From IMG/VR virus record IMGVR_UViG_3300032116_000001, positions 1 through 64,000 of that record: a stretch of 64,000 bases of DNA. One strand, given 5' to 3'. Position numbers and translations under genes: made by a program. A model generated the notes under the pieces. The model had not been told where the DNA came from, made no database searches, and worked only from the letters and a program-made list of their open reading frames with translations. Positions 6,985 to 50,599 of this stretch are shown here, one piece after another. The first letter of the stretch is position 1; every line of letters starts with the position of its first letter.

Positions 6985-7132
6985 TCTAGCATCGGGGAGC
7001 GGGCATAATGCCTGTCTCCCCATTTTTATGACTTTCTGCGATTATGCAGCACGATTAATCTTTTTTTAAAAAAATCCCCTTTTTTCGCAGAGAAACTTGC
7101 TATAATAAAGTATCGGAGACGTAGAATAAGTA

Positions 7133-8386
7133 ATGAAGATCACCGCATGTATTTACCAAACTGGCGATAGCCTCACAATCGCTTTTGACAATGGAAGTCC
7201 GCTGACTATCCATAGTTACGATGGCAATTTTAACAAGGCCGTTGAAGCCTATCGCAATGGGGATGTTGAAGAACTTTATAGTTTGATGAACATCCTCACA
7301 TCTATCGAAAAGATGAGCGAATCTATTGATGACATTAAGGTTGTCGGCAATAGCGTTTATTATCGTGATGAAGAAATCCACAACGTTATTGTTGATCGGA
7401 TTTTGGACTTCCGTAATAATGGCTTTGACATTAAGCCGCTTGCGCGAATGTTGTCCAAGCTGATGCTGAACCCCTCTCGCCGCGCCGTGGAAGAACTCTA
7501 CAAGTTCCTTGCCCACAAGAACCTTCCCGTCACCGATAATGGTAATTTTCTTGCCTATAAGGGCGTGACTTCGGATTATTGGAGCATTACGAGTGGTGAT
7601 GCCAAGCTGATTAAGGGGACGGTTGATGATGGAGGCCGTATCTACAATGGTGTCGGTGAAGAAATCCAAATGCACCGCAATAAGGTGGATGACAATAAGG
7701 ACAATCACTGTTCTTATGGCCTTCATGCTGGTAGCCTTGAATACGCTGATAACTTCCGTAGTTACGGCGGCTACGGCGGAAAGCTGATGATCGTGGAAAT
7801 TGACCCCGCTGATGTAGTGTCGATTCCTAGCGATTGTGGTTGCCAAAAGCTCCGAACTTGCCGCTATAAGGTTGTTGGCGAGTATGACGGACCTCTGACT
7901 CAGCCTCTGTACGAATCTAATTTTTCCACCGAAAATGACGATCTTTATGATGAAGATATTTTTGACGAAGATGATTGCAACGAAGGTGACTACGACTATA
8001 CTGAGCCCGAGGATTTTGACAATGAAGATGATTTAGGTGTCGTCACCGACCAGTGTGGGAATGTTCTTAATGATGGCGATGTTTGTCTGTCTGATGACGG
8101 CAAGTTGTACGCCTGGAATGAAAATAACAAGACGTTTGTTGACCTTGACGATTCTGAAAATGAGCTTGATAGCGCGATGTGGGAGAAGATGACCTATCTC
8201 GACCCCGATGCCCGAAATGATAGTGACTTTTTGGTACTGATTGATGGCATGATCTACGAGGACTCTTTCGGCAATAAACTCAAGTGGAATGAGACGGCTG
8301 ACTTGTTTGAATATGTCAATACAACGTCGTGGCCCAAGCCTACTTATCTTCAGGCAATTCGCAATAAGATTGTTCGCGTTCAGTGA
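7133..8386 (+). CDS. rIIB: rIIB-like protein with acidic C-terminal extension
   Basis: NPSRRAVEELYKFL, GNFLAYKGV, CSYGLHAGSLEYA, VEIDPADVVSIPSD, KLRTCRYKVV. Confidence 0.85.
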   Translation: MKITACIYQTGDSLTIAFDNGSPLTIHSYDGNFNKAVEAYRNGDVEELYSLMNILTSIEKMSESIDDIKVVGNSVYYRDEEIHNVIVDRILDFRNNGFDIKPLARMLSKLMLNPSRRAVEELYKFLAHKNLPVTDNGNFLAYKGVTSDYWSITSGDAKLIKGTVDDGGRIYNGVGEEIQMHRNKVDDNKDNHCSYGLHAGSLEYADNFRSYGGYGGKLMIVEIDPADVVSIPSDCGCQKLRTCRYKVVGEYDGPLTQPLYESNFSTENDDLYDEDIFDEDDCNEGDYDYTEPEDFDNEDDLGVVTDQCGNVLNDGDVCLSDDGKLYAWNENNKTFVDLDDSENELDSAMWEKMTYLDPDARNDSDFLVLIDGMIYEDSFGNKLKWNETADLFEYVNTTSWPKPTYLQAIRNKIVRVQ

Positions 8387-29187: not shown

Positions 29188-29235
29188 AAGATTTGTCCCC
29201 TGTAAACCAGGGGGCAAACTCCCCATAATATCACC

Positions 29236-29496
29236 ATGAATTCAGAAACCGAAAAGCAAGAAAGTATTCTTGTCGTGAAAGATCACAAGACGCTCAGAAA
29301 TCATCCCGTGCCCGTGCTGAAAGCCTGGTTGAATAGATTTGTTGAGAATGGAGATCAAGTGACAATCAAACAAGTGGACGATGACATTCTATTTACTTGT
29401 CCTAATCGATCACTTGAATTTTATGTTCTTAAACTTTGTGATGTGATCGATGAATTTGGATTTGCAAAAACACTCTTCCCCGAGGACACGATCTAA
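29236..29496 (+). CDS. hypothetical protein
   Basis: 86-aa ORF. Confidence 0.6.
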   Translation: MNSETEKQESILVVKDHKTLRNHPVPVLKAWLNRFVENGDQVTIKQVDDDILFTCPNRSLEFYVLKLCDVIDEFGFAKTLFPEDTI

Positions 29497-29540
29497 AAAA
29501 TCCCCCTTTTTTGCACGACGAAACAGATATATAAAAAGTA

Positions 29541-29735
29541 ATGGTAATTTTCAACAAAGGTGATCGAGTTCAAATCTCCGCAAAAGAATCCACTTCCGTG
29601 GATGAATGGGGTAGAATCTCCTCGACTGGAACCGTGGAAAGCAACATCCCAGACCAAAATGGCGAAATCTTAGTGCATGCTGATGGCCTTTTGGCTATGA
29701 TTAGTGTTCTGCCTACAGAATTGACGAAAATCTAA
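29541..29735 (+). CDS. small SH3-like protein
   Basis: FNKGDRVQI...GTV...ELTKI. Confidence 0.6.
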   Translation: MVIFNKGDRVQISAKESTSVDEWGRISSTGTVESNIPDQNGEILVHADGLLAMISVLPTELTKI

Positions 29736-29753
29736 AACAACGTAAAACACCTT

Positions 29754-29831
29754 GGGGGTGTAGCTTAGTTGGACTAAAGCAAACCGCTCATAACGGTTAG
29801 ATCGTGGGATCGTAGCCCACCGCCCCCACCA
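29754..29831 (+). tRNA. tRNA with CAT anticodon (Ile2 or elongator Met)
   Basis: G1-C72 paired, AACCG-CTCATAA-CGGTT, atypical T-loop ATCGTAG. Confidence 0.85.
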
Positions 29832-29873
29832 AATTTCCCCTTTTTTCACCCGATCAGAATCATATAATAGATA

Positions 29874-30353
29874 ATGAACATCTCAGTTAGAAACGCAAAG
29901 GTTGACGCACATAATTCCCAGGAAACTCTGTGCTTTTCGGCGCAAATAACCATTGATGACAAACTTGCTTTTTATGCCGAAAACAATGGCACTGGCGGAA
30001 CTAATACTTATTATCTCAACACTGATGAAGATCAATCCGCACAATTCCTTGAAGATGCAGAGGAATTTGCTAAGAATCTAACTGGAGAAAATTTTGAAGC
30101 ACTGGATTTGCTGATCGGGTCACTGGTAAGCGCATACACAACCGCGAACGAAAAGATTGACACGACCATTTTTATGATCGAAGATTCACAAGTTTACACC
30201 GTGGATTTTGGAAAGAATCTTACCCTGTTGGATATTGTAGGCTTTGTTAAAGACAATCCCAACGCAAAGGTTCTGAATATGCTGAATTTTTCAGACGCAG
30301 TTCGCGAAATCGCCCTGGCAGATTTGAAGAACCAGGATTTTTCCCAAGTTTAA
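29874..30353 (+). CDS. hypothetical phage protein
   Basis: SQETLCFSA...AENNGTGG. Confidence 0.75.
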   Translation: MNISVRNAKVDAHNSQETLCFSAQITIDDKLAFYAENNGTGGTNTYYLNTDEDQSAQFLEDAEEFAKNLTGENFEALDLLIGSLVSAYTTANEKIDTTIFMIEDSQVYTVDFGKNLTLLDIVGFVKDNPNAKVLNMLNFSDAVREIALADLKNQDFSQV

Positions 30354-30398
30354 GAGAAAAATCCCCTAAGTTTTGGAAATCAAAAGGATATATAAAAC

Positions 30399-30980
30399 AT
30401 GAACCAGCTGCTTTCGGAAGAAGAACAACAAGATCGCGCAAGCTTCTTGAAGAAACAAAAGTTATCTCAAATCAAGACAATCGCGATCATTATGGTGATC
30501 GTGTTCACTGGAATCTGGGGCACGACTAGTATCATCAAGAACCATCAAAACATGATTGCACAACAAAAAGCCGCGCAAGAACGACAAGCAAAGAAAGATC
30601 AAGAAGCTGCACGGCTCGCAGAACAATCGAAGGCTGAACAAGATTTTATCGAATCCTATAAAGGACGACTTGAAGCATGGGAGAACATTCTCGGCAATGA
30701 CAACCCCATTAAGGGCTGGCCCGTGCGCCGACGAGAATACATCATTCAAGACATTGCCAATAAAGAAGCAGAGATCACAAATATCTTGAGCAAAATTGGT
30801 TCAGCCACAACTAGGACTGAACACAATAACGGAAACACATCGCTTGCTTACAACGTAGAACAGATGAGCGAACTGCAAAGTCAACTCAAAAAGGCTGAAT
30901 ACGAGCTTTATCTACTGAATACAGAACTCCGCCGCGATGAATACTTTGAAGGACGAATCGCTGGATACGATCTAAAATGA
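30399..30980 (+). CDS. membrane-anchored coiled-coil protein
   Basis: One TM followed by a Q/E/K-rich helix. Confidence 0.75.
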   Translation: MNQLLSEEEQQDRASFLKKQKLSQIKTIAIIMVIVFTGIWGTTSIIKNHQNMIAQQKAAQERQAKKDQEAARLAEQSKAEQDFIESYKGRLEAWENILGNDNPIKGWPVRRREYIIQDIANKEAEITNILSKIGSATTRTEHNNGNTSLAYNVEQMSELQSQLKKAEYELYLLNTELRRDEYFEGRIAGYDLK

Positions 30981-31083
30981 TTAGCTTTTTCTATGTCATG
31001 TCGTTTGTAACGATCATAGCCATTGTTCTGATCGTAGCGTGGATTAAAGAAGTGATTCATCACTTCAAAAAGTAAAACAAAAT

Positions 31084-31159
31084 GCCCCAGTAGCTCAGTG
31101 GATAGAGCAGCGGCCTTCTAAGCCGTTTGTCGGAGGTTCGAGTCCTCTCTGGGGCACCA
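31084..31159 (+). tRNA. tRNA-Arg (TCT)
   Basis: Canonical cloverleaf, CCA. Confidence 0.97.
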
Positions 31160-31202
31160 AATTTTCCCCTTATTTCAAAACACTTTTATACTATATCAAA
31201 GT

Positions 31203-31913
31203 ATGAAGCTCTACACCACGCAACCAATTGAAGTGTGGAACAAACTCCAAGAACAAAAGATTCTGATCGCAGATGCGATGCTGGGAGAACACATCGATCA
31301 AGAATACGCAGAAAAGAATGGGTTTTCTATCGAAGATGATAGCTTCTATGCCGCCTATTCGTGGATGAAAGAGCAAATGGAACATCGAATTCCAGGCTAC
31401 CAAGGTAACTGGCCGTGGTGGGCATGGACGCATAAAATTGACATCCGATCAGAACGACATCTGTACCCAAAGGGAGAAGAATTTGTTATGATCGAACTCG
31501 AAATCCCCGATGAGAAAGTATTATGTTCTTGCTTCCAGGGATGGCACTCCGTTTTGAATCGACGCTATCTAGCGAAAACTATGATCGAAGAAGCCAAAGC
31601 CGATCAAGAATGGATGGAGATTACGAACATGGACACAGACCCCGAGAAACCCAAAATCTCACTCTACCAATTACGAAAGTATGCCAAGGGCGAAGAACCA
31701 TGGCCCGAAACAATCGAAGATTCCCCCGAAAAAGCACGAAAGAAGCAAGAATATAAAGAAAAGCAAAAACGAACATGGGAAAATATCTTCGACATTGAAT
31801 GGATGAAGAAATCACAGTACGAAGGCGGGGACCAGATTCAAGCCTGCTTTGAAGAACTAAACATCAACCAAGTCATCAAAGCAAAGATGTTCAAAGGGGC
31901 GCGAAAGTCATAA
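31203..31913 (+). CDS. DUF3841 domain protein
   Basis: LYTTQ...AYSWMKEQM...WPWWAW...ELEIPDEKVLCS..WHSVLN...WENIFD...IQA. Confidence 0.8.
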   Translation: MKLYTTQPIEVWNKLQEQKILIADAMLGEHIDQEYAEKNGFSIEDDSFYAAYSWMKEQMEHRIPGYQGNWPWWAWTHKIDIRSERHLYPKGEEFVMIELEIPDEKVLCSCFQGWHSVLNRRYLAKTMIEEAKADQEWMEITNMDTDPEKPKISLYQLRKYAKGEEPWPETIEDSPEKARKKQEYKEKQKRTWENIFDIEWMKKSQYEGGDQIQACFEELNINQVIKAKMFKGARKS

Positions 31914-31953
31914 AAATCCCCCTTTTGTTTACGATCAAATTCATATAATAGAT

Positions 31954-32163
31954 ATGAACGATTCAAATCGCTTTGAAGTAATCAGCTCAGGTCCATACAA
32001 TTTGAAGATTGTTGCGCAAACTATGACTGAGTGCATGGATATGATTCGACGAAACTCTGACATGGTGGACTTCTGGGCAGTTTTAGACCATTCTACGAAA
32101 ACCGTGGTCGCTTTAAGCCAGGACTGGAAAGTCTTGCCAACATTCAAACCCGCAGTAAACTAA
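31954..32163 (+). CDS. hypothetical protein
   Basis: Promoter motif upstream. Confidence 0.6.
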   Translation: MNDSNRFEVISSGPYNLKIVAQTMTECMDMIRRNSDMVDFWAVLDHSTKTVVALSQDWKVLPTFKPAVN

Positions 32164-33443
32164 TGAAAGAATCTCGATATATTTTCGCTGACGTGAGCGC
32201 GAATAATAACAAGTTTTGGAACATCAAAATTGAACCAAACTTCACGGTCGTAACTTCGTGGGGCCGAGTCGGAGATAACGCACAATCAAAGGAATTTCCC
32301 CACGGAAGCCTTGCAGACGCAGAAAAGTTCTTCGATAGGAAATGCCGCGAAAAGGAACGAAAAGGATACGTTAAGCAAAGAGTTCTGATCGGAGAATACA
32401 CCACGCAAGATAACACTTCGCTTGCGTCAGTTGCCAAACAACAAATCAACACAAATAGCCCCGAATTAGATGAACTAATTGCCTTCCTGACTAAAGCAAA
32501 CGTTCATAACATTCTAACAGCAACAGCTATGGAATACGACACTTCAAAGGGAGTTTTTACAACGCCCCTCGGAGTTGTCACGAACGATGCCATTCAAGAT
32601 GCACGAAGCATCTTGGCATCAATGGGCCTTCTTGTGCATAATCAAGATTGGAACTCCCCCGATTGGAATTCGCTCTTGTCTATGTACCTTACTGCCATCC
32701 CTCAAAAGATTGGACGCAGAAAGCCAGACCCAAGAGAACTCTTCCCGAGCCTTCAAGCTATTCAAAATCAAAGCAAAATTCTTGACGACCTGGAAGCATC
32801 ATTCCAATCTGTCGTGAGCGCACCACTGACGCAGAAAGGGGATGACACAAACACGCCACAAGTGTTTGATGTGAAATTGCATCTTGTAGACGATCAAAGC
32901 ATAATTCGACGAATCAAAAACAAATACGACTCCACACGAAAGACCATGCACGCATCATATCATCTGGGGGTGAAACGAGTCTTTTCTGTCGAAATTAACG
33001 CGATGGCAAAGGCATATGGTGATCGGGGAAAGAACGTCGGCAACGTGATGGAACTCTGGCATGGGACACGAGCGGGGAACCTTTTGAGCATCCTTAAAGG
33101 CGGACTGCAAGTCCCACCCGCATCGAGCCCTCATGTGACGGGGAGAATGTTCGGGGATGGATTGTATTTTTCAGATCAGTCCACGAAAAGCCTCAATTAT
33201 GCCTATGGAGCAGCACCAGGACAAAGAGGAGGAATTGAATCGTCCACGTTCATGTTTCTCGCAGATGTAGCAATGGGACGCCCATTTGTCCCAACGTCCT
33301 ATACACGACCGTCAAAGTACCCCGTGCAAGGACATGATTCAATATTTGCAAAAGCAGGACAATCAGGCGTACACAATAATGAAATGATCGTATACACCAC
33401 CGATCAATGCAACCTCACCTACCTGGTTGAATTCGGAAACTAA
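32163..33443 (+). CDS. WGR-domain poly(ADP-ribose) polymerase (PARP)
   Basis: WGRVG; helical regulatory domain; LWHGT, GRMFGDGLYF, KSLNY, NEMIVY (H-Y-E triad). Confidence 0.92.
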   Translation: MKESRYIFADVSANNNKFWNIKIEPNFTVVTSWGRVGDNAQSKEFPHGSLADAEKFFDRKCREKERKGYVKQRVLIGEYTTQDNTSLASVAKQQINTNSPELDELIAFLTKANVHNILTATAMEYDTSKGVFTTPLGVVTNDAIQDARSILASMGLLVHNQDWNSPDWNSLLSMYLTAIPQKIGRRKPDPRELFPSLQAIQNQSKILDDLEASFQSVVSAPLTQKGDDTNTPQVFDVKLHLVDDQSIIRRIKNKYDSTRKTMHASYHLGVKRVFSVEINAMAKAYGDRGKNVGNVMELWHGTRAGNLLSILKGGLQVPPASSPHVTGRMFGDGLYFSDQSTKSLNYAYGAAPGQRGGIESSTFMFLADVAMGRPFVPTSYTRPSKYPVQGHDSIFAKAGQSGVHNNEMIVYTTDQCNLTYLVEFGN

Positions 33444-33492
33444 AAAAATCCCCCGTTATCAAAAGGGGGATTTGATATAATAAAATACCACA

Positions 33493-33786
33493 ATGACCGT
33501 TAAACAAGCATTTGAAAAGGCCTTTGGACCAATCCCCGAAGGGGCTACTTGCCATATCGGGTGCCGCGACATGTACAAGAACATCGAAGTGGACGCTTGC
33601 TATCGCCACATTGGTGAGACGTTCTTTTTGAACGTTCATAACAAGTTTGTTAGGTTCTGCGACCATTTTGCGTTTGGACCCGACATTAGCCACCGACCCG
33701 CGTCAGCGTTCCTCGGCTTCTTTGGGGGTGAGTATGATCGTGTGGTCGAAGAATGGATCGAATCTCAAAACGAAAAGCATAACTAA
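33493..33786 (+). CDS. hypothetical protein
   Basis: Promoter-like motif upstream. Confidence 0.65.
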   Translation: MTVKQAFEKAFGPIPEGATCHIGCRDMYKNIEVDACYRHIGETFFLNVHNKFVRFCDHFAFGPDISHRPASAFLGFFGGEYDRVVEEWIESQNEKHN

Positions 33787-33831
33787 AAAAAATCCCCCTT
33801 TTTTCAAAAGGGGATTGAATATATAGAAGAG

Positions 33832-34506
33832 ATGAGCATTTCTCAATCGCAAACCAATAGCATCAAGAACATCGTAAACGAGCTTGTGAAGAAGGGGACT
33901 TCCTTCACCGCCCATGACATCACCCTGATTATGCGCGGCTCTGGCAATGACGTTACGCATAATTCCGTCAAGCCCGTTGTGCATGATTATATGCAGAGCG
34001 TAGGAAAGTATTCCAGTAAGCTGCGCACCTTCGGCCTCGCCGTGTTCGGCACGCTCGTCGCCATCCGCGCCATTGTCTATGGCCCGACTTCCACGGACAT
34101 TGCCAATTATGACCCGAATTCCATTCGGAATATTCTTGCCAATAATCAGGCACCCGTGACCTCCAACACGAATCAGCCCACGACTAGTTCTGCTCGTGGA
34201 ACTAAGACCACCAACACTCAAAACAAGGGAGTGATTAAGGTGGGTAGTGGTGGCCGTGTCCGCGTCCCGACCAAGTATGTAAACGCCCTTGGAGTGAACT
34301 GGCAAGGCAAGGAAGTTGGACCTTACGTTTACTACTCGAAAACCAGTGACGGCTTTATCGTCGCCAAGAATGACCAAGGTCAAGGATGGAAGTCCATCAC
34401 CGTCGATCAATACGGAAACGTTCTGCTCCGAACCAATCTCAACGTAAGTAACTTTACGATTGAACAAGTTGGCTCCGACAAGATTGAAATTCGCGCAAGT
34501 CAATAA
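33832..34506 (+). CDS. putative DNA-binding protein with AbrB/MraZ-like C-terminal repeats
   Basis: KVGSGGRVRVPTKY and TVDQYGNVLL. Confidence 0.5.
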   Translation: MSISQSQTNSIKNIVNELVKKGTSFTAHDITLIMRGSGNDVTHNSVKPVVHDYMQSVGKYSSKLRTFGLAVFGTLVAIRAIVYGPTSTDIANYDPNSIRNILANNQAPVTSNTNQPTTSSARGTKTTNTQNKGVIKVGSGGRVRVPTKYVNALGVNWQGKEVGPYVYYSKTSDGFIVAKNDQGQGWKSITVDQYGNVLLRTNLNVSNFTIEQVGSDKIEIRASQ

Positions 34507-34682
34507 ACTGACTTAACACAATCGGCTATAGGCGGAAGTGATTTTATCACTTCCGCTTTTCTTTTATGAACACGATTTTTTATGACTTTATATCATGATC
34601 TTTTTTATGACTTTCTATGATCGGGTGGCACGATTATAATAAAAATCCCCTTTCTTTTGTGGTCCAATCGGATATATAAATT

Positions 34683-35264
34683 GTGATTAATATCAGTAAT
34701 TTCCGCGGTCCTATCGTCCAAATCGAACTTCGCCAGGGGAGTCTTTTGGAAGCAAAAGACTTAGACATCATTGTTAATGCTGCGAACTGTAAGATGCGCG
34801 GTGGCGGAGGATTAGACGGCGCGGTTCATGATGCTGCAGGCCCTAACCTTCTTGAAAAGCTGAAAGAACTTGCCCCCTACGGCAGCCCGACTTCCCATCC
34901 CGTTGTTACAGATGGCTTTGAAACTGGATTTAAGAAAATCATTCACACTCCTGGTCCTGTGTGGGCTGATGGTGTTTCAGGCGAGCGCATTGCACTTCGG
35001 GCAACATATGATTATGCTCTTGATGCCGCTAATGCGATCTGCAAAAACAAGAATTATAAATCAGTGGGGTTTGGTTCTATTAGCACAGGAATCTTTGGAT
35101 TTCCTCTTGACCTTGCAATGCCCATCGCTCTTGGTGCCGTATCTGAATGGGTGCGGGTTGCGCAAAATGTTTATTTCAACAAAATTGTCTTTGTGATGTA
35201 CGGGGAAGAAGAATACAACAAGTATAAAACAGCTTTTGACGCTATTAAAGCGTGGAACCCGTAA
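34683..35264 (+). CDS. macrodomain ADP-ribose hydrolase (MacroD/YmdB-like)
   Basis: IVNAAN..MRGGGGLDGAVHDAAG, IIHTPGP, ISTGIFGFP. Confidence 0.92.
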   Translation: MINISNFRGPIVQIELRQGSLLEAKDLDIIVNAANCKMRGGGGLDGAVHDAAGPNLLEKLKELAPYGSPTSHPVVTDGFETGFKKIIHTPGPVWADGVSGERIALRATYDYALDAANAICKNKNYKSVGFGSISTGIFGFPLDLAMPIALGAVSEWVRVAQNVYFNKIVFVMYGEEEYNKYKTAFDAIKAWNP

Positions 35265-35412: not shown

Positions 35413-35961
35413 ATGAAAACCCTGAGTGAATGGAAATCTTTCCTGAAGACAAATCCCTGCATGAACTCTCGATTTGCCAAGGCACGAGAAGAATGTCCCG
35501 ATTTAATTAACAAAGAATTAAATCAATTGCCTGTCCCACCATTGGATTTGATTTTCGAGGCTGTAAGTCGTGCGTCTTGCGATCCAAACTTTGATCCTTA
35601 CGAGCCTTTCGAGGCCCTTTTGCACGAAGACCCGATGCGGCGCATGCGGGCACTTTCAGAGGTTAACATGCGCATGGATCATATTTACACTCTGGTTCAC
35701 AAAACACATTGTCGAGGATGCTTAGCGAGAGGCAATTTTGAATACATTTGGCAAATCATCAAGCATTACTGCCCCGATCACGATATTGACTGGCCCGACA
35801 TTGAATATAAAAAATTCTCATTGAGTGATTATGTTCGTGACGTAACTAAAACGCTTAATAGTCGCATGTGTTACGATATTGGCTGCATGGATTCCATGAG
35901 TGAAGATTATGGTCGAGAAGGCAAAGCGCAGCTTTTGCCACATGTGCTTGACGAGGGATAA
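35413..35961 (+). CDS. hypothetical protein
   Basis: 182-aa ORF with GAGG SD. Confidence 0.7.
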   Translation: MKTLSEWKSFLKTNPCMNSRFAKAREECPDLINKELNQLPVPPLDLIFEAVSRASCDPNFDPYEPFEALLHEDPMRRMRALSEVNMRMDHIYTLVHKTHCRGCLARGNFEYIWQIIKHYCPDHDIDWPDIEYKKFSLSDYVRDVTKTLNSRMCYDIGCMDSMSEDYGREGKAQLLPHVLDEG

Positions 35962-36002: not shown

Positions 36003-36251
36003 ATGAAGTCTTGTGATTTCGAGCTTAGTGGCCAGTTATTGATCGACGAAAATCTTGCCCCCCAACACGATTTTGAAGGAAAGTGCTTTGGATTCAAGCT
36101 GCCTGATGGTCGTATTGTTCGAATGGTAATGGCCTTGGAGATTGAAAACCCAGACACGGGGAATTTCGAGTATTTTTCTGATTGTTCCAAGATGGAATCC
36201 ATCGGGATGACTCTTCTCGATTACTTTAAGTCTAATTTTACTTTGATCTGA
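36003..36251 (+). CDS. hypothetical protein
   Basis: Promoter motif upstream. Confidence 0.7.
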   Translation: MKSCDFELSGQLLIDENLAPQHDFEGKCFGFKLPDGRIVRMVMALEIENPDTGNFEYFSDCSKMESIGMTLLDYFKSNFTLI

Positions 36252-36268
36252 AGTGGAGAAGAATAAAA

Positions 36269-36658
36269 ATGTCTAAGTGGACCAAAGAAATTCCGACGGA
36301 ACCTGGGTATTATTGGTTCTACGGATGGTTTGAAAAAAACAGCTCTTACTACAAAAAAGACGGAAGTATGTATTTTGTCGAGGTTAGTAAAGCGGCAAAT
36401 TCTCTTGTCTTCGTAACGAAAGGTACGTTTCTTTATCCCACAATGGCCCTTGGACAATGGTCTAAAGCTGATGTCCCCGATGTGCCCGATCTTGGTCCGC
36501 ATTTTTATGAGGGTTGTGAAGCATTGTTGATTGAAGATCAAGAGCGCCATATAGTCGCAAAAATAGATGCCCCCACCACCCGTGTGAAAACCCACCCGAT
36601 TGGTGTTGACCCAATTCATGCGGTGTGGCGGGCAATGGATGATCTTGAATTCATCTAA
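36269..36658 (+). CDS. hypothetical phage protein (WTxExPTEPGxYW)
   Basis: Common phage N-terminal motif. Confidence 0.7.
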   Translation: MSKWTKEIPTEPGYYWFYGWFEKNSSYYKKDGSMYFVEVSKAANSLVFVTKGTFLYPTMALGQWSKADVPDVPDLGPHFYEGCEALLIEDQERHIVAKIDAPTTRVKTHPIGVDPIHAVWRAMDDLEFI

Positions 36659-36989
36659 AAATCCCCTTTCTATCGTTGCAGAAAATAATATAAAACCGAG
36701 GATACACATTTTGATTTCAAAGCAACAAGCACTTGATTATAATACGAAAGAGTCTTTATTGATGCGTTACATTGATTCAAAGATTCTTCTCTATCGCGGT
36801 CGTATATTAGAGTTTTCGGTTGAGGGTCATTCTCAAGAATTGCTTGATAAGTTGATGCCATTGTATCAAGAAAATGGGTGGGATATCAAGCAAATTAATC
36901 GAAAAAAGACAGGTGGACACAGCAAACATCGGTATTGGCGCGTAAAATAATCCCCCATTTTCCATAGCCGAAAATAATATAAAAAGAAC

Positions 36990-37065
36990 GGGTCAGTAGC
37001 TCAGCAGGTAGAGCAGCGGTCTTTTAAACCGCGGGTCGTGGGTTCGAGTCCCACCTGGCCCACCA
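36990..37065 (+). tRNA. tRNA-Lys (TTT)
   Basis: Canonical cloverleaf, CCA. Confidence 0.97.
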
Positions 37066-37081
37066 AATTTCCATCACTCTC

Positions 37082-37306
37082 ATGAACATATATTCAACCA
37101 GCGCAGAAGAAATCGTTTCGGCGATTGTCAAGCAGCAAAAGAACAAGCCGACATTTGTGCATGTTCAAGGTGATGACAGTTATGAATTTTACATGACTGA
37201 TGCCAATGTGTTCCTGTGCTACGATTGGAATATTAACAAGGAATTTAAGGTCGAAACGATTGAAGAACTGATCGACGAAATCAATCGACTCAAGTCGTAC
37301 ACCTAA
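37082..37306 (+). CDS. hypothetical protein
   Basis: 74-aa ORF. Confidence 0.6.
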   Translation: MNIYSTSAEEIVSAIVKQQKNKPTFVHVQGDDSYEFYMTDANVFLCYDWNINKEFKVETIEELIDEINRLKSYT

Positions 37307-37351
37307 TTTTCCCCCGTTTTTACACGATCAGAATCAATATATAAAGGTATC

Positions 37352-38260
37352 ATGGACGAATCGCAGATCATCTTTTATTCTGTTTTTCTGGGGTTGATTT
37401 TCTTGAGCATTGCGATTTACGCATTGTGCCAACACCTAGACAAGAAAAAGAAAGTAGAAAGAGTAGAGCTTTATTCATTTATCAAAACTGGTCTGGCACA
37501 GACGGTTGATATCAAAGTGTTTTTTTCTACAATTGAAACAATGGCTCATAAGCAGCGCTGGAGTTGTTATCAGGTATCTAGGGCGATTGCTGAAGTTACT
37601 TGCACTTCGATGCTTAATAAACCAATAGGATCAGCATTATTTTCCTGGATTGATATACCCCGCTTTGCTGTGTGGTATGCAGTAAATGTTTTTGCCAGCG
37701 AAAACACAAGAAAAATGGCATGCATCAATCCACTTACTGCAATTGACTACGCTCTATATGTTGACAAAATGCCTCACCACACAACCAGATCAGCAGCATG
37801 TAGACTAGGCGTTGTCCCGAACTATCTCGAAGCCCCATACAATACTTTTTTTGCTATTGATCGCAGCTTTGGTTACACTAATGTTGAAAAACAACATAAT
37901 TATAGTTTGCCTTGGAAGGTTTTAGTGTCATCTGGCAGGTTCGCAATAGATTATGCATTAAAGGTTGATAAATCCCCCAACGAAGAAACTAGAGAGGCGG
38001 CATGCAGGCATTTTGTAACGGCGATGGAGTATGCTATTCAGATTGATCGAGGTCCTAATGAAAAAACTCGGAAGGCCTGTTGTGAAGATGCACGCTGCGC
38101 CTTTGAATATGCTTTTAATATAGATAAGTCGGCGCATCCTGATACGTATAGATCAGTTTGCGGTTTGCAGCTCCATCACGGCCTTGTTAGGTGGAAGCAT
38201 GTTAAATTCAATGATTTAGTTAGACAATATGAAGCTTCGTTGGGTAAACCAAAGATTTAA
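37352..38260 (+). CDS. membrane-anchored helical-repeat protein
   Basis: N-terminal TM; ~25-aa repeats AxxYAxxVDKxPxxxTRxAAC x4-5. Confidence 0.75.
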   Translation: MDESQIIFYSVFLGLIFLSIAIYALCQHLDKKKKVERVELYSFIKTGLAQTVDIKVFFSTIETMAHKQRWSCYQVSRAIAEVTCTSMLNKPIGSALFSWIDIPRFAVWYAVNVFASENTRKMACINPLTAIDYALYVDKMPHHTTRSAACRLGVVPNYLEAPYNTFFAIDRSFGYTNVEKQHNYSLPWKVLVSSGRFAIDYALKVDKSPNEETREAACRHFVTAMEYAIQIDRGPNEKTRKACCEDARCAFEYAFNIDKSAHPDTYRSVCGLQLHHGLVRWKHVKFNDLVRQYEASLGKPKI

Positions 38261-38305
38261 CTTAATTTTCCCCGTTTTTGCACGATCAGAATCAATATAT
38301 AAAGT

Positions 38306-38633
38306 ATGAGCAAAATCACAATTGGAATCTACAAGTCCGATGGCACTCTACTTGGTTACAAGGCAAGCCCCAAGTGGACACTCACTTCTGACAAAAGTGA
38401 TGCCGAACGCTACGTTTACAATCCAAGCGGGGATGGTTACAATTACAACATTGAGAAAGTGTTCCATATTGTCACGCGCAATCATGGGGCCTCTAAATTT
38501 CGTTTTCGATGAAATCTTCAACATACTAAAGTCTCACAAAGGTTTGAGAATCGGATATGAGTTTGAGGATTCTGACGAGCCTGTAATCACACACATGATT
38601 GAAAGCTCGGGTGTCTACCAAATTTCCCCTTAA
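38306..38633 (+). pseudogene. frameshifted paralog of 38663..38992
   Basis: Extra C at ~38483 (CGCAATCATGGG vs CGCAATATGGG in the paralog). Confidence 0.75.
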
Positions 38634-38662
38634 TTTCTAAAAAGCAATCAATATATAAAGCA

Positions 38663-38992
38663 ATGAAGGACACAATTGCTATTGGCATTTACCACTCTGA
38701 CGGAAAACTTCTCGGATACAAAGTAGACACGTTTTGGTCACTTTCTCAAGACAAAGCTGATGCCAAGCCTCACATTTTTGATGAAAAAGGAGAAATCCCC
38801 GATAATATTATTGGTAATCTAAGTCAGATTGTCACGCGCAATATGGGTCCTCTAGCCTTCTTCTCCGCAGAAACCGTGAACAAGATCAGTTCTCATAAGG
38901 GTCTCCGAGTGGGCTATGAACAAGATGGCTCCGACAAGCCTGTGATCACACACATGATCGAGGCTACAGGGGTTCATAAAATTTCCCCTTAA
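38663..38992 (+). CDS. hypothetical protein
   Basis: Intact paralog; promoter motif upstream. Confidence 0.75.
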   Translation: MKDTIAIGIYHSDGKLLGYKVDTFWSLSQDKADAKPHIFDEKGEIPDNIIGNLSQIVTRNMGPLAFFSAETVNKISSHKGLRVGYEQDGSDKPVITHMIEATGVHKISP

Positions 38993-39020
38993 TTCCAAAC
39001 AAAACTCCCTATATAAAGAC

Positions 39021-39917
39021 ATGAGTAGAGTAAAGAGAGTTATTGATAATGGTCTGGTATCGAAAAACTCAGTGCCAAAGCACTTCCCCGATTCGATTCA
39101 ATACGAGACGATCATGGGAAGTGTGGCCTACGGAGTGTCTTCTGATACGTCGGATATGGATATTTATGGATTTTGTATCCCGCCCAAGCACATTGTCTTT
39201 CCTCACTTAGCGGGACATATCCCTGGCTTTGGTCAACAGCCTGAGAAATTCGAGCAATGGTCGGTGCATCATATCAAAGATGAAGAAAAAAATACCGAGT
39301 ACGATTTTTGCATTTACAATATCGTCAAGTATTTTAGTTTGGTTATGGAAAACAATCCCAACATGGTGGATTCTCTTTTCACTCCACAAAACGCGATTTT
39401 GCACTGCTCTCCAATCGCTCAAATGGTGCGTGACGAACGTCATATCTTCTTGCATAAGGGAGCGTGGCACAAGTTCAAGGGCTATGCCTACTCGCAGATG
39501 CACAAAATTCGATCAAAGGAGGCTCCGCAAGGCAAGCGAAAAGAGCTGGTGGAACAGTTTGGATTCGACGTGAAGTTTGCTTATCATGTTGTAAGATTGA
39601 TTGACGAAGTTGAGCAAATTCTTGTTGAGGGCACTCTTGATCTTCAAAGAAATCGAGAACAGCTTAAATCTATTCGGAGAGGTGAATGGACTTTAGAGGA
39701 AATCGAGGAATACTTTACTCGTCGAGAAAAAGAACTTGAGCTGGCTTATGCTAACTCAAAGCTGCCTCACACGCCCGATGAAAAGCGAATCCGCCAGCTT
39801 TTGATGAATTGCCTTGAGCATCATTACGGAAACCTATCAGACGCCGTAGTGGATGTTGACGCGGCCACGAGAACACTTCAGCAAGTTGCGCATCTAATTC
39901 GACAAGGGGGATTCTAA
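39021..39917 (+). CDS. DNA polymerase beta-superfamily nucleotidyltransferase (YcgL-like)
   Basis: GSVAYGVSSDTSDMDIYG; NPNMVDSL; DVKFAYHVVRL. Confidence 0.88.
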   Translation: MSRVKRVIDNGLVSKNSVPKHFPDSIQYETIMGSVAYGVSSDTSDMDIYGFCIPPKHIVFPHLAGHIPGFGQQPEKFEQWSVHHIKDEEKNTEYDFCIYNIVKYFSLVMENNPNMVDSLFTPQNAILHCSPIAQMVRDERHIFLHKGAWHKFKGYAYSQMHKIRSKEAPQGKRKELVEQFGFDVKFAYHVVRLIDEVEQILVEGTLDLQRNREQLKSIRRGEWTLEEIEEYFTRREKELELAYANSKLPHTPDEKRIRQLLMNCLEHHYGNLSDAVVDVDAATRTLQQVAHLIRQGGF

Positions 39918-44271: not shown

Positions 44272-45057
44272 GTGATTCAAACTTCCAATAAGAAAACAAG
44301 AGTAAAGCGCAGTCGAATTTGGACGATGCCTAAAGACGAGTTCGCTCAACTAGTGGCCTCAAGTCAAACTTATGTCGAAATTCTCCGAGCCATTAACTAC
44401 ACCATACGAGGAGGAGCTTTTCGAATTTTAAAAGAACGAATTGCGACAGAAATGATCGACGATTCACATATATTAAAGAATGGAAGGCAAACCATTTATG
44501 CCCATAGATTCAATACTCGGTCAGATGACGATATATTTTGCGAAAATTCTACATACAATAGTGGCCCTGCCCTGAAAAAGAGAATGATTAAGCTAGGCTT
44601 ACCTGAAGAATGCACAAAATGTGGGCTTGGTGCAACATGGAATGATGAACCTCTATCTCTGCAAGTAGACCATATCAATGGGGTGCGCAACGATAACAGA
44701 TTAGAGAATTTGAGGCTTCTGTGCCCAAATTGTCATTCTCAAACCGAAAATTTTGCTGGCAGAAAGTTGAACGCAAAAAACAAATCATGTCCAGAATGCT
44801 GCGCTAAGATCAGTGGATACCGTAAAGATCAGAGATGCCAATCTTGTGCCAATAAGATCAGGTCTAGAGAAATGCAACTAATATCAAAACCATCAAAAGA
44901 CGAGCTTCAAGATATGTTGTGGAAAATGCCCGCGACTAGGATTGCTAAGATATACAATGTGTCCGATAAAACAGTTGGTAATTGGGCTAAATCCTACAAA
45001 ATTGACAAACCGAGCCGTGGACACTGGGTCAAAAAAAATACTCCCCCCCCCTTGTAG
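44272..45057 (+). CDS. HNH homing endonuclease with C-terminal zinc-finger/HTH
   Basis: LQVDHINGVRNDNRLENLRLLCPNCHSQT; ATRIAKIYNVSDKTVGNW. Confidence 0.9.
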   Translation: MIQTSNKKTRVKRSRIWTMPKDEFAQLVASSQTYVEILRAINYTIRGGAFRILKERIATEMIDDSHILKNGRQTIYAHRFNTRSDDDIFCENSTYNSGPALKKRMIKLGLPEECTKCGLGATWNDEPLSLQVDHINGVRNDNRLENLRLLCPNCHSQTENFAGRKLNAKNKSCPECCAKISGYRKDQRCQSCANKIRSREMQLISKPSKDELQDMLWKMPATRIAKIYNVSDKTVGNWAKSYKIDKPSRGHWVKKNTPPPL

Positions 45058-49723: not shown

Positions 49724-50599
49724 TTAGGCCGTCGCCAGTTCTTTCTTTGCTTCCAGGCTCTTGGCCTTGCCTCGGCCCATAATGAAGTTTGCGGCTTTCC
49801 CCGCAAGTCCTGCGGCCTGCACGACCATTTTGGGGTCGTCATTCAGAACCTTGAGCCAGCCCTGAATATAGGCCTGGGTGTTCTCGGTGTCATTGTCGAT
49901 GCCGATTTCTTGGCAGAGAAAGGCGGCTGTGAGTTCTGCTACCAGTTCCTCGCGGCTGTAACCTTCCTTGTCAAGCGTTGAGATTTGCATGACTTCGGGT
50001 CGAGCCAATCGGGATTCGTGGCCCGTCGCGTGACCAAGTTCATGGAATAAGGTCGCGTAATAGGCTTCGGAACTGACAAAAGATTCGATAATAGGCATTT
50101 GGACCCAATCGCCATAAGGCGAATAACAGGCACGATTTCCACCGTGACGAATCTCAGGCACCAGCGGCATTTCTTGGACCACTTCCTCACAACGTTCGAT
50201 GCGGCGATTGTCTTTCAGTTCCTCAATCGGCGGCAGGTCGAGCCCTTCGGTTTGCTCCACATTGAAAACATAAAATTGCTTCAATACGGGGTAGGAACCT
50301 GTCTTGCCAGTCTTATCATCCTCATAACTCACCTGCTTCCAGAACACAATCGGTGTGCCCTTCTCGCCCTTCTTGATTCGCCCGCCCATCTTGTTGATTT
50401 GATTGCAAGTCATCCAGCGCGGGTCGGCAAAGGTAGACATTGACAAAAGCAGAAGGTTGAGCCCGCTATACTTGGTTCCGCTACTGGGGTTGCAGGGTCG
50501 AATCACCGACCAGGGTCGCTTCCAAGCAACGTTTCCGCTCTTTAGGCCCTCGATGATGGTGTTGGTTACGATTTCGTAGACTTCGGACTTCTTCTTCAT
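49724..50599 (-). CDS. ardC: ArdC-like antirestriction protein (ssDNA-binding + zincin-like)
   Basis: WKRPW, YSGLN, IKKGEKG, VFNVEQ, YYATLFHELGHATGH, YSREELVAEL, AYIQGW. Confidence 0.92.
   Translation of the reverse strand: MKKKSEVYEIVTNTIIEGLKSGNVAWKRPWSVIRPCNPSSGTKYSGLNLLLLSMSTFADPRWMTCNQINKMGGRIKKGEKGTPIVFWKQVSYEDDKTGKTGSYPVLKQFYVFNVEQTEGLDLPPIEELKDNRRIERCEEVVQEMPLVPEIRHGGNRACYSPYGDWVQMPIIESFVSSEAYYATLFHELGHATGHESRLARPEVMQISTLDKEGYSREELVAELTAAFLCQEIGIDNDTENTQAYIQGWLKVLNDDPKMVVQAAGLAGKAANFIMGRGKAKSLEAKKELATA

What the first reader, a model, noticed from the sequence alone, without database searches (positions are those of the whole stretch)
32163..35264. Phage ADP-ribosylation writer and eraser: WGR-PARP near a macrodomain
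A PARP with WGR, helical regulatory and catalytic domains and an intact H-Y-E triad (the eukaryotic PARP1-3-type, DNA-break-activated layout) lies 1.2 kb from a MacroD-type hydrolase. Inference: reversible ADP-ribosylation for host takeover or phage DNA end protection. The macrodomain might also reverse defence ADP-ribosylation (e.g. DarT/CmdT-type).
Basis: partly seen in the sequence, partly recalled or inferred. Interest (0 to 1): 0.6.

Follow-up and report, generated by a model that had tools for sequence, protein, structure and literature searches.

The report
Phage PARP with conserved DNA-binding partner
A 379-kb freshwater jumbo phage carries an intact PARP-type ADP-ribose polymerase and a MacroD-type hydrolase 1.2 kb away, but the gene that travels with this PARP across phages and bacteria is an unnamed DNA-binding protein lying between them, and the macrodomain is a recent local insertion.

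Summary
Window 32163-33443 encodes a 426-aa WGR / helical-regulatory / catalytic PARP whose H300-Y335-E407 triad aligns with PARP1. Window 34683-35264 encodes a MacroD/YmdB-type macrodomain with both signature motifs.

The "writer plus eraser" reading is only partly supported:
- The macrodomain and a 182-aa ORF form a ~1.5 kb insertion seen only in this phage and one near-identical contig.
- The closest PARP relatives (65-70% identity) lack it at this site.
- A strong terminator (34530-34558) separates it from the PARP unit.
- The genome has no PARG or ARH.
- Macrodomains occur in about 56% of jumbo phages, so sharing a genome means little.

The conserved partner is the 224-aa ORF at 33832-34506, which has no family name. 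Its model (pLDDT 87) shows a winged helix plus an AbrB/MraZ-like domain. It lies beside this PARP clade in about 40 viral and bacterial loci. In 201 genomes of one phylum it tracks PARP almost perfectly (12 both, 1+1 discordant, 187 neither; p = 3e-17).

The upstream DUF3841 gene appears to have an ADP-ribosyltransferase fold. That linkage is limited to the window's close clade.

Phage PARPs are already recorded in the literature. I found no description of the partner.

The parts
31203..31913 (+). DUF3841 protein (236 aa) with a predicted ADP-ribosyltransferase-like fold. It is the conserved upstream neighbour of PARP only in the window's close clade.
   Evidence: Pfam PF12952, E 6e-19. Present directly upstream of PARP in L007, L010, L013 and the sister contig. 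AF2 model pLDDT 76. 14 of the top 16 VIA matches are ART-fold proteins (CC0527, TreX, DarT, pertussis S1, LT-A, Scabin, Tpt1), Z 5.0-6.9; Foldseek also puts DarT first at E 0.11. Found in only 3 of 49 other PARP-bearing viral records.
31954..32163 (+). 69-aa ORF of unknown function. By the ORF coordinates its stop codon ends at 32163, the base where the PARP ATG begins.
   Evidence: coordinates. A 69-aa gene is called at the same place in the sister contig. No family found.
32163..33443 (+). PARP, 426 aa. WGR at 32184-32378, helical regulatory domain at 32460-32795, ART catalytic domain at 32907-33434. H300 at 33060-33062, Y335 at 33165-33167, E407 at 33381-33383.
   Evidence: (phrog_23333).
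33493..33786 (+). 97-aa Cys/His-rich ORF of unknown function, specific to this lineage.
   Evidence: No family. An iterated HMM finds it only in the window. The sister contig calls a 104-aa gene at this position.
33832..34506 (+). Conserved PARP partner (P0004, 224 aa). N-terminal winged-helix domain (aa ~4-88), a low-complexity linker, and a C-terminal tandem AbrB/SpoVT (MraZ-like) domain (aa ~130-224). Predicted to bind DNA.
   Evidence: No Pfam, PHROG, NCBIfam or PADLOC family. AF2 pLDDT 87. MraZ: Foldseek prob 1.0, E 0.011; VIA Z 7.3, rmsd 2.5 over 85 residues. wHTH Z 7.6. Weak MazE/AbrB Pfam hits in 4 of 37 members. AbrB/SpoVT are the top sub-threshold PDB profile hits. Linkage to PARP.
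34530..34558 (+). Intrinsic-terminator-like hairpin (13-bp stem, T tail) after the partner gene. It marks the likely end of the PARP transcription unit.
   Evidence: An exact TATAAT hexamer follows at about 34634, upstream of the macro start (read from the sequence).
34683..35264 (+). MacroD/YmdB-type macrodomain (193 aa, GTG start). Motifs N35-x6-G-G-L-D45 and G-I-F-G are present.
   Evidence: It is an insertion relative to L007, L010 and L013.
35413..35961 (+). 182-aa ORF of unknown function, inserted together with the macrodomain.
   Evidence: No counterpart in L007, L010 or L013. Present after the macrodomain in the sister contig. No family and no PDB match.
39021..39917 (+). RlaP-family nucleotidyltransferase (RNA-repair associated). 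It is the conserved downstream boundary of the variable slot.
   Evidence: Pfam PF10127, E 2e-18; phrog_388. About 80% identical in L007 and L010.

Best explanation
The core of this locus is a two-gene unit: a compact WGR-HD-ART PARP followed by a dedicated DNA-binding partner (winged helix plus AbrB/MraZ-like domain).

Inferred mechanism. The WGR domain senses DNA breaks or ends. This releases the autoinhibitory helical domain, and the H-Y-E catalytic domain uses NAD+ to ADP-ribosylate itself, the partner, other DNA-bound proteins or DNA ends, most likely as chains. The partner either tethers the enzyme to DNA, serves as its substrate, or restrains and regulates it.

The unit sits in the early/accessory, tRNA-rich arm of a jumbo phage, downstream of rIIA/rIIB. 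It belongs to a cassette that has moved repeatedly between bacteria and phages.

The MacroD-type macrodomain, with its 182-aa neighbour, is a later lineage-specific insertion behind a terminator. It is probably an independent mono-ADP-ribose / O-acetyl-ADP-ribose hydrolase. It may trim the last ADP-ribose left by the PARP or remove host-imposed ADP-ribose, but it is not an obligate part of the PARP system.

Shown: domain content, intact catalytic residues, synteny, co-occurrence statistics, predicted folds. Inferred: DNA-dependent activation, polymer synthesis, targets, the partner's role, and the macrodomain's substrates.
For: PARP domains and triad. Enzymes of the same architecture (HaPARP, CdPARP) make PAR in vitro, and HaPARP needs DNA for activation (PMC4245714 and PMC8120803).

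Partner linkage:
- The iterated HMM finds the partner directly downstream of PARP, on the same strand, in 22 distinct viral and about 17 bacterial loci.
- With the N-domain HMM, every hit at E <= 2e-10 among 20,115 flank ORFs lies beside a PARP.
- In 201 genomes of one phylum: PARP 13, partner 13, both 12, Fisher p = 2.6e-17. The genes are adjacent in 10 of the 12.
- 21 of 49 PARP-bearing bacterial genomes have exactly one copy, all of them in the nearer PARP clade.

Partner fold.

Macrodomain as an insertion behind a terminator.

Nucleic-acid repair or replication genes recur near PARP: RlaP here; DNA ligase and RlaP in L046; tRNA nucleotidyltransferase and DNA ligase in Cellulophaga phi17:2; clamp loader in L030.

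PARP tree: the window clade lies inside a supported mixed clade of 20 bacterial and 16 viral rows, and the tree needs at least 7 virus/bacterium label switches.
Against: - There is no biochemical or expression evidence. No RNA run holds the locus.
- H-Y-E is necessary but not sufficient for polymer synthesis (PARP3 is a mono-transferase; my own knowledge).
- The partner fold matches are middling (Z about 7; Foldseek E 0.01).
- The co-fold test of PARP with the partner's N-domain gave no verdict, so physical binding is unsupported.
- The partner is absent from the more distant PARP clades, including every cultured PARP phage examined, so PARP can work without it.
- Divergent macrodomains lie within 2 kb of PARP-partner pairs in two other lineages (L030, L046), so some functional tie between macrodomain and PARP cannot be excluded.
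- Some 'viral' and 'bacterial' labels describe the same DNA (L050 = L112). This weakens the transfer count.
Confidence: 0.55

Rival explanations
1. Dedicated writer/eraser pair. The PARP modifies host or phage targets, and the neighbouring macrodomain reverses exactly those marks to give a reversible switch.
For: Both genes are intact and 1.2 kb apart on one strand. The arrangement is stable in 20 runs from 12 studies. Divergent macrodomains lie within 2 kb of PARP-partner pairs in L030 and L046. 16 of 18 PARP phages of 300 kb or more have a macrodomain somewhere; this tally of mine combines, with the binomial test. MacroD enzymes remove Glu/Asp-linked and phosphate-linked mono-ADP-ribose, which PARP1-3 produce (my own knowledge).
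Against: The macrodomain is absent from the syntenic slot of the nearest PARP relatives. A terminator lies between the genes. The macrodomain's nearest non-sister relative is a bacterial chromosomal gene at 49% identity. 11 of 16 complete records is not above the 56% base rate, and genome size confounds the 300-kb figure. No PARG or ARH is present to remove chains. In cultured PARP phages the macrodomain is 200 kb or more away or absent.
Confidence: 0.2
2. The macrodomain is a counter-defence or housekeeping enzyme unrelated to the PARP. It would strip ADP-ribose placed by host defence transferases on phage DNA, RNA or proteins, or degrade O-acetyl-ADP-ribose, ADP-ribose-1''-phosphate or ADP-ribose-derived signals.
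For: It lies in a variable accessory slot of the early region as its own cassette. Macrodomains occur in 56% of jumbo phages irrespective of PARP (PMC9503650). Phage-encoded antitoxin-like hydrolases that neutralise DarT defences are documented (PMC11825919, PMC11481870; titles and abstracts).
Against: It is MacroD/YmdB-type. The best PDB and NCBIfam hits are YmdB, MACROD2 and DR_2288, not DarG, and no PADLOC model matches. The genome has no KptA/Tpt1, so the RNA-repair route that yields ADP-ribose-1''-phosphate is not evident.
Confidence: 0.35
3. PARP plus partner is a toxin-antitoxin-like or abortive-infection / superinfection-exclusion module. PARP would be a DNA-end-triggered NAD+-consuming toxin, and the AbrB/MazE-fold partner would be its repressor or neutraliser.
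For: The AbrB/MazE fold is typical of antitoxins. The distribution is sporadic: 13 of 201 genomes in a phylum. The cassette has been exchanged repeatedly between phages and bacteria. It is a tight two-gene cassette.
Against: The gene order (enzyme first) is atypical for type II systems. No PADLOC hit. PARP already carries its own autoinhibitory domain. No interaction was supported (no verdict). Many PARP clades lack the partner.
Confidence: 0.25
4. The macrodomain serves the upstream DUF3841 ART-like protein rather than the PARP, as a DarT/DarG-like pair split by the PARP unit.
For: The DUF3841 model's best matches are ART-fold proteins, including DarT. Both genes are in the locus. G003 also has both, though far apart.
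Against: The close relatives keep DUF3841 without any macrodomain nearby. The fold scores are modest, and the catalytic residues are unassigned. The macrodomain is not DarG-type.
Confidence: 0.08

Closest known systems
Bacterial WGR-HD-ART PARPs (Herpetosiphon aurantiacus PARP, Clostridioides difficile CD160 PARP) and the PARP2/PARP3 catalytic core
   Same: The same three-domain order, the H-Y-E triad, the WGR motif, and a size of about 430 aa. More than 1,900 homologues at E <= 1e-10, many of them 47-53% identical proteins from Armatimonadota, Blastocatellia and other bacterial MAGs.
   Different: It is encoded by a jumbo phage. It belongs to a sub-clade that carries a dedicated downstream DNA-binding partner. 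No zinc fingers, BRCT or N-terminal tail. Activity is untested.
PARPs already annotated in phages (Xanthomonas XacN1 and Xoo-sp13, Stenotrophomonas RAS14 and CM1, Klebsiella FBKp34, Cellulophaga phi4:1 and phi17:2, Aeromonas Aeh1)
   Same: The same family and architecture. They were noted in surveys as rare phage PARPs of unknown role (PMC4245714, PMC7824862, PMC9503650).
   Different: Only 26-38% identical. Their downstream genes are not partner-family members. In the five cultured genomes searched (XacN1, Xoo-sp13, RAS14, FBKp34, phi17:2) a macrodomain is 200 kb or more away or absent.
MacroD-type macrodomains (E. coli YmdB, human MACROD1/2, D. radiodurans DR_2288)
   Same: E 1e-27 to 1e-29 over the full domain. 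The N-x6-GG[VLI]-D and G-[VIA]-[YF]-G motifs are present (the motif definition is from my own knowledge).
   Different: Phage-borne, at most about 49% identical to any non-sister homologue, and below the NCBIfam equivalog cut-offs.
MraZ and AbrB/SpoVT/MazE swapped-hairpin DNA-binding proteins
   Same: The partner's C-terminal half matches MraZ, a single chain with two AbrB-like repeats. There are weak MazE/AbrB sequence signals.
   Different: It is fused to a distinct N-terminal winged-helix domain, and that domain is the part that tracks PARP. In some Armatimonadota the same N-domain heads a protein of about 1,270 aa instead.
DarT-DarG ADP-ribosylation toxin-antitoxin systems
   Same: An ART-fold protein (DUF3841, with DarT among its best fold matches) and a macrodomain occur in one locus.
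   Different: The macrodomain is MacroD-type, not DarG-type. The genes are not adjacent. No PADLOC match. Close relatives have DUF3841 without a macrodomain.

Membership tests
PARP / ARTD clade 1 (PARP1-3-like, DNA-dependent) | ART catalytic domain of the PARP family | tested here: met
   PF00644: 96.5 bits against a cut-off of 26.7. PARP1 catalytic-domain structures match at E 1e-22.
PARP / ARTD clade 1 (PARP1-3-like, DNA-dependent) | H-Y-E catalytic triad and NAD+-site residues | tested here: met
   H300, Y335 and E407 align with the LWHGSR, GIYFAD and NEYIVY motifs of PARP1. The K-S-x-N-Y motif is kept as TKSLNY. The triad is invariant in 26 homologues.
PARP / ARTD clade 1 (PARP1-3-like, DNA-dependent) | Helical regulatory (HD / PARP_reg) domain preceding the ART domain | tested here: met
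   PF02877: 31.2 bits against a cut-off of 26.8, aa 100-211, covering profile positions 5-110 of 135.
PARP / ARTD clade 1 (PARP1-3-like, DNA-dependent) | WGR domain with its W-G-R motif | tested here: met
   PF05406, E 5.8e-17. SWGRVG is present. G34 and R35 are invariant, and W33 is kept in at least 90% of homologues.
PARP / ARTD clade 1 (PARP1-3-like, DNA-dependent) | DNA-break-stimulated synthesis of poly(ADP-ribose) | not testable with these tools
   This needs an enzyme assay. It is shown only for HaPARP and CdPARP in the literature.
PARP1 proper | N-terminal zinc fingers and BRCT domain | tested here: not met
   The protein starts with WGR at residue 8, and no other Pfam domain is found.
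MacroD-type macrodomain hydrolase | Macro fold, with closest similarity to YmdB / MacroD1/2 | tested here: met
   PF01661: 94 bits. Top PDB hits are DR_2288, YmdB and MACROD2.
MacroD-type macrodomain hydrolase | Signature motifs N-x6-GG[VLI]-D and G-[VIA]-[YF]-G | tested here: met
   N35...G42-G43-L44-D45 and G-I-F-G, read from the translation and aligned with YmdB. The motif definition is recalled from the macrodomain literature, not from a tool.
MacroD-type macrodomain hydrolase | Hydrolysis of mono-ADP-ribose esters or O-acetyl-ADP-ribose | not testable with these tools
   This needs an enzyme assay.
PARG / ARH poly(ADP-ribose) erasers | Presence of a PARG-type or ARH-type hydrolase in the genome | tested here: not met
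   PF10021 and PF03747 give no match in the 378,848-bp record. The eukaryotic-type PARG model PF05028 was not searched.
DarT-DarG toxin-antitoxin | Adjacent DarT-family ART and DarG-type macrodomain recognised by defence-system models | tested here: not met
   No PADLOC match for any of the eight locus proteins. The macrodomain's best hits are MacroD-type. DUF3841 and the macrodomain are 2.8 kb apart, with the PARP unit between them.
AbrB / SpoVT / MazE / MraZ superfamily (partner, C-terminal half) | Swapped-hairpin beta-barrel fold with a family sequence signature | tested here: inconclusive
   MraZ is the top Foldseek hit (prob 1.0, E 0.011) and scores VIA Z 7.3 over 85 residues. Only 4 of 37 members give weak Pfam hits. 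PDB profile hits to AbrB are E 0.09-0.15.
ADP-ribosyltransferase superfamily (DUF3841 protein) | ART split-beta-sheet fold with a catalytic H-Y-E or R-S-E type triad | tested here: inconclusive
   Fold: 14 of the top 16 VIA matches are ARTs, Z 5.0-6.9, on a model with pLDDT 76. Catalytic residues are not assigned. The invariant R82/R85, S109 and E217/E218 are only candidates.

The most novel reading that the evidence does not exclude
The PARP and the unnamed winged-helix / AbrB-like protein form an undescribed mobile two-component ADP-ribosylation system, shared by jumbo phages and several bacterial phyla. In it, a DNA-end-sensing PARP acts on, or is governed by, a dedicated DNA-binding partner, serving as a defence, counter-defence or DNA-end-protection device. 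In this phage lineage it has gained a second ART-fold enzyme (DUF3841) and a MacroD hydrolase, which would make a small ADP-ribosylation island.
Probability: 0.35. Interest if true: 0.7.

Novelty: new variant of a known kind. Interest (0 to 1): 0.5.

Why it matters
Prokaryotic and phage PARPs have been catalogued for more than a decade, yet no physiological role, target or partner has been assigned to them. A partner gene that co-occurs with PARP almost one-to-one gives a concrete handle: two proteins to co-express, one predicted DNA-binding activity to test, and a phenotype to look for in bacteria and phages. It also corrects an attractive but weak inference. A macrodomain close to a PARP in a jumbo phage is not in itself evidence of a writer/eraser circuit, because more than half of jumbo phages carry macrodomains. 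If the DUF3841 fold assignment holds, a Pfam family of unknown function joins the ADP-ribosyltransferase superfamily.

Tried and rejected
- **Co-fold test.** PARP with the partner's N-domain (aa 1-110) gave no verdict: score 0.00, controls not run. It is not evidence either way.
- **My own MacroD HMM.** It found no macrodomain in 139 PARP loci, but it was too narrow. The Pfam model later found divergent macrodomains near PARP in L030 and L046, so I do not use the zero.
- **blastp clustering of neighbours.** Shadow ORFs overlapping the conserved PARP gene dominated the result, which gave no further conserved neighbour.
- **Control sets.** A set anchored on rIIA returned one locus. The RlaP-anchored set gave 19 records, only 4 of them complete and PARP-negative. 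That is too few, so I took the base rate from PMC9503650.
- **Phage classification.** Terminase_6C and Gp23 Pfam models found nothing in the genome, so the phage's taxonomic placement is left open. Megablast found only tRNA-sized matches to known phages.
- **DUF3841.** No paper in the library mentions it. The word-based search found only 3 proteins, and the PDB profile search found nothing.
- **Atlas.** The feature search gave no usable hit for the partner.
- **Papers.** The Aravind 2015 ART review (PMC6126934) is not held. No supplement is held for PMC7824862.
- **Other ADP-ribose and NAD+ genes.** No NAPRTase/NadV, KptA or NADAR in the genome. NMNAT, NadR, Sir2 and Nudix were not searched.
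- **Not used.** Read laying, because there is no RNA holder and contigs cannot show transcripts.

Full report
**What is there**

The window is the first 64 kb of a 378,848-bp IMG/VR virus record that CheckV rates complete. It opens with rIIA and rIIB homologues (4885-8386). It then runs through a long stretch of short, mostly + strand ORFs interspersed with 15 tRNA genes, an arrangement that resembles the early/accessory region of large T4-like myoviruses. Megablast finds no close cultured relative. The 4-kb locus itself recurs almost letter for letter in 20 public runs from 12 studies (2017-2025), labelled freshwater and 'fungus' metagenomes. None of them is RNA.

**The PARP**

ORF 32163-33443 encodes 426 residues with three Pfam domains, all above their curated cut-offs:
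- WGR, aa 8-72
- PARP_reg, aa 100-211
- PARP catalytic, aa 249-424

The best solved relative is the human PARP1 WGR-catalytic construct (E 1.9e-23). The alignment puts H300, Y335 and E407 on PARP1's LWHGSR, GIYFAD and NEYIVY motifs, and the K-S-x-N-Y nicotinamide-site motif is kept. In 26 homologues the triad and G34-R35 of the WGR motif are invariant. There are no zinc fingers and no BRCT, so the layout is that of the PARP2/3 core and of the bacterial enzymes HaPARP and CdPARP. According to the literature these make poly(ADP-ribose) in vitro, and HaPARP needs DNA for activation (PMC4245714, PMC8120803). The word-based protein search returned 1,931 relatives at E <= 1e-10, mostly proteins of about 430 aa from metagenomes and bacterial MAGs.

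**The macrodomain**

ORF 34683-35264 (GTG start) is a full macrodomain (Pfam 94 bits). It is closest to D. radiodurans DR_2288, E. coli YmdB and human MACROD2. It carries N35-x6-GGLD45 and GIFG, which I recall as the MacroD-type signatures. The one correction is that two ORFs (97 and 224 aa) lie between the two genes.

**Does the macrodomain belong to the PARP?**

*(i) Nearest relatives.*
- PARPs 65-70% identical lie on contigs L007, L010 and L013. These keep the order DUF3841 - PARP - a 208-224-aa protein - a few small ORFs - RlaP, and have no macrodomain within 10 kb.
- ORF-by-ORF comparison shows counterparts for window ORFs 29206-33443 and 36003-39917. There are none for the 97-aa ORF, the macrodomain or the 182-aa ORF after it.
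- Only one contig, whose macrodomain is 88% identical, has the window's arrangement.
- The next macrodomain relative is 49% identical and sits among SecA and ABC-transporter genes in a bacterium.
- So the macrodomain plus the 182-aa ORF is a ~1.5-kb insertion into a variable slot.

*(ii) Transcription signals.* A 13-bp-stem hairpin with a T tail lies at 34530-34558, directly after the 224-aa gene. An exact TATAAT follows before the macrodomain. These are pattern matches, not proof, but they argue for separate units.

*(iii) Wider co-occurrence.*
- Among 49 other PARP-bearing IMG/VR records, 19 have a Pfam macrodomain somewhere, including 11 of the 16 that are at least 90% complete. It lies within 10 kb of the PARP in only L030 and L046, plus a sub-threshold hit in L031.
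- Of five cultured PARP phages, three have a macrodomain 200 kb or more from the PARP and two have none.
- A survey of 21,191 viral proteomes reports macrodomains in 56% of jumbo and 40% of medium-sized phages (PMC9503650). Against that rate, 11 of 16 is unremarkable (p = 0.22).
- My tally for phages of 300 kb or more is 16 of 18 (p = 0.003). Genome size confounds this figure, and my own control set was too small to help.

The genome also has no bacterial-type PARG, ARH, NADAR, KptA or NAPRTase. If the PARP makes chains, the phage encodes no obvious chain-degrading enzyme. At least one bacterial macrodomain has been reported to act as a poly-ADP-ribosylhydrolase (PMC6397177, title seen), so this is not absolute.

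**The conserved partner**

The 224-aa ORF at 33832-34506 has no hit in Pfam, PHROGs, NCBIfam or PADLOC. Linkage to PARP is strong:
- An HMM iterated from it over six-frame ORFs of all fetched PARP loci found homologues next to PARP in 22 distinct viral loci and about 17 bacterial ones. The bacterial hosts include Armatimonadota, Blastocatellia, Chthonomonadales, Omnitrophota, Planctomycetota and Kofleriaceae. The homologue usually starts within 50 bases of the PARP stop on the same strand.
- With an HMM of the N-terminal 100 residues, scores are bimodal. Every hit at E <= 2e-10 among 20,115 flank ORFs lies by a PARP, and the next best is E 0.04.
- In whole genomes, 21 of 49 PARP-bearing bacteria have exactly one copy. 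All 21 are in the nearer PARP clade, and several copies are unlinked to the PARP.
- In 201 genomes sampled across the phylum of one of these bacteria, PARP (above cut-off) occurs in 13 and the partner in 13. Both occur in 12, one alone in 1 each, and neither in 187 (Fisher p = 2.6e-17). The genes are adjacent in 10 of the 12.
- In five of those genomes only the N-domain matches, at the head of an open frame of about 1,270-1,340 aa. That frame is followed by a SWIM zinc-finger protein. The N-domain is therefore the PARP-linked module.

The AlphaFold2 model (pLDDT 87) shows three parts:
- A winged helix at aa 4-88 (VIA Z 7.6 to BrxR; also Fur and PadR).
- A disordered linker.
- A beta-rich domain at aa 130-224. 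MraZ, a single chain with two AbrB-like repeats, is its top Foldseek hit (prob 1.0, E 0.011) and scores VIA Z 7.3, rmsd 2.5 over 85 residues.

Weak sequence signals agree with this fold. MazE/SpoVT-AbrB or AbrB-like Pfam hits occur in 4 of 37 members, and AbrB and SpoVT are the top sub-threshold PDB profile hits. I read the protein as a DNA-binding partner. The fold evidence is moderate, and the linkage evidence is strong.

**DUF3841**

The gene directly upstream of the PARP (31203-31913) is a DUF3841 member.
- It precedes the PARP in all close relatives, but occurs in only 3 of 49 other PARP-bearing viral records and never adjacent.
- Its model (pLDDT 76, shallow alignment) matches almost only ADP-ribosyltransferase-fold proteins. 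CC0527, TreX, DarT, pertussis toxin S1, PltA, LT-A, Scabin, TreTu and Tpt1 fill 14 of the top 16 VIA places out of 48,161 chains, at Z 5.0-6.9. Foldseek also ranks DarT first, at E 0.11.
- Each score is modest, but the agreement among them is notable. The catalytic residues are not assigned.

**Evolutionary setting**

In a FastTree of 116 full-length PARPs, the window groups with L007, L010 and L013 (support 100). This group lies inside a supported clade of 20 bacterial and 16 viral rows, nearly all of which have the partner. The tree needs at least 7 switches between 'viral' and 'bacterial' labels.

Caveats: this is a quick method on an unrooted tree, and some records are the same DNA filed under both labels (L050 = L112).

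Neighbouring genes in other phages repeatedly concern nucleic-acid ends:
- DNA ligase and RlaP in L046
- tRNA nucleotidyltransferase and DNA ligase in Cellulophaga phi17:2
- Clamp loader and dUTPase in L030
- RlaP in the window

**Interpretation**

The best-supported reading is a PARP-plus-partner unit that responds to DNA ends. The macrodomain is an independently acquired accessory hydrolase. The main open alternatives are whether the unit serves host takeover, protection or repair of phage DNA ends, or a toxin-antitoxin-like conflict function. None can be decided in silico.

A co-fold test of PARP with the partner's N-domain gave no verdict, so I make no claim of direct binding.

**Novelty**

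Phage PARPs are on record as rare and uncharacterised (PMC4245714; PMC7824862, which cites the XacN1 protein; PMC9503650). The PARP and the macrodomain are therefore new members of known kinds. I found no paper in the held library describing the partner family or its link to PARP. That absence covers only this library.

**Limits**

- Flank analyses cover plus or minus 10 kb.
- Many viral records are fragments.
- The viral and bacterial loci were found through PARP-derived peptide patterns, so they sample the family unevenly.
- Promoter and terminator calls are consensus matches.
- There is no expression or biochemical evidence.

Noticed in passing
window 31203-31913: A DUF3841 protein whose predicted structure matches almost only ADP-ribosyltransferase-fold proteins (DarT, pertussis S1, LT-A, Tpt1, CC0527). 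This suggests that a Pfam family of unknown function belongs to the ART superfamily.
   Followed up: partly
L145:2426-6208 (-) and L146:3868-7737 (+): In several Armatimonadota the PARP is followed by a protein of about 1,260-1,290 aa with no Pfam match. Its N-terminus is the partner's winged-helix domain. A SWIM zinc-finger protein of about 590 aa comes next, and in L146 a thioredoxin-like gene sits between PARP and the large protein. This may be a larger version of the PARP system.
   Followed up: partly
L010:13591-15299: The RlaP reading frame, intact in the window (39021-39917), is split into two pieces in a relative, with a 191-aa ORF between them. This could be an intron or homing-element insertion, or a disrupted gene.
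   Followed up: no
window 18056-45291: 15 tRNA genes are scattered through the accessory region. An HNH endonuclease gene (44272-45057) is wedged between tRNA-Gln and a tRNA-Arg/Arg/Cys cluster.
   Followed up: no
window 4885-8386; 49724-50599 (-); 62549-63859 (-): rIIA and rIIB homologues at the start of the record, an anti-restriction protein family member (phrog_7245), and a UDP-glucose dehydrogenase.
   Followed up: no
G000:C1:257010-257870 (outside the window; L003:1033-1893): A second, weak macrodomain-like ORF of 287 aa. It scores 23.2 bits in the genome scan and 21.4 bits as a protein, against a cut-off of 22.
   Followed up: partly
L050 vs L112; L036 vs L123: An identical PARP appears in an IMG/VR 'viral' contig and a Pyrinomonadaceae MAG, and a near-identical one in a 373-kb viral record and a Treponema MAG. 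The same DNA is filed as both virus and bacterium, so counts of phage-bacterium transfers are uncertain.
   Followed up: no
L030:12876-13403 and L046:7804-8265: Divergent macrodomains (25-32 bits) lie within 2 kb of PARP-partner pairs in two unrelated phage lineages. Proximity of macrodomain and PARP has therefore arisen more than once, though rarely.
   Followed up: partly
window 31203-35264: The whole locus recurs near-identically in 20 sequencing runs from 12 studies (2017-2025), labelled freshwater and 'fungus' metagenomes. This suggests the phage is widespread and stable. No RNA run holds it.
   Followed up: no
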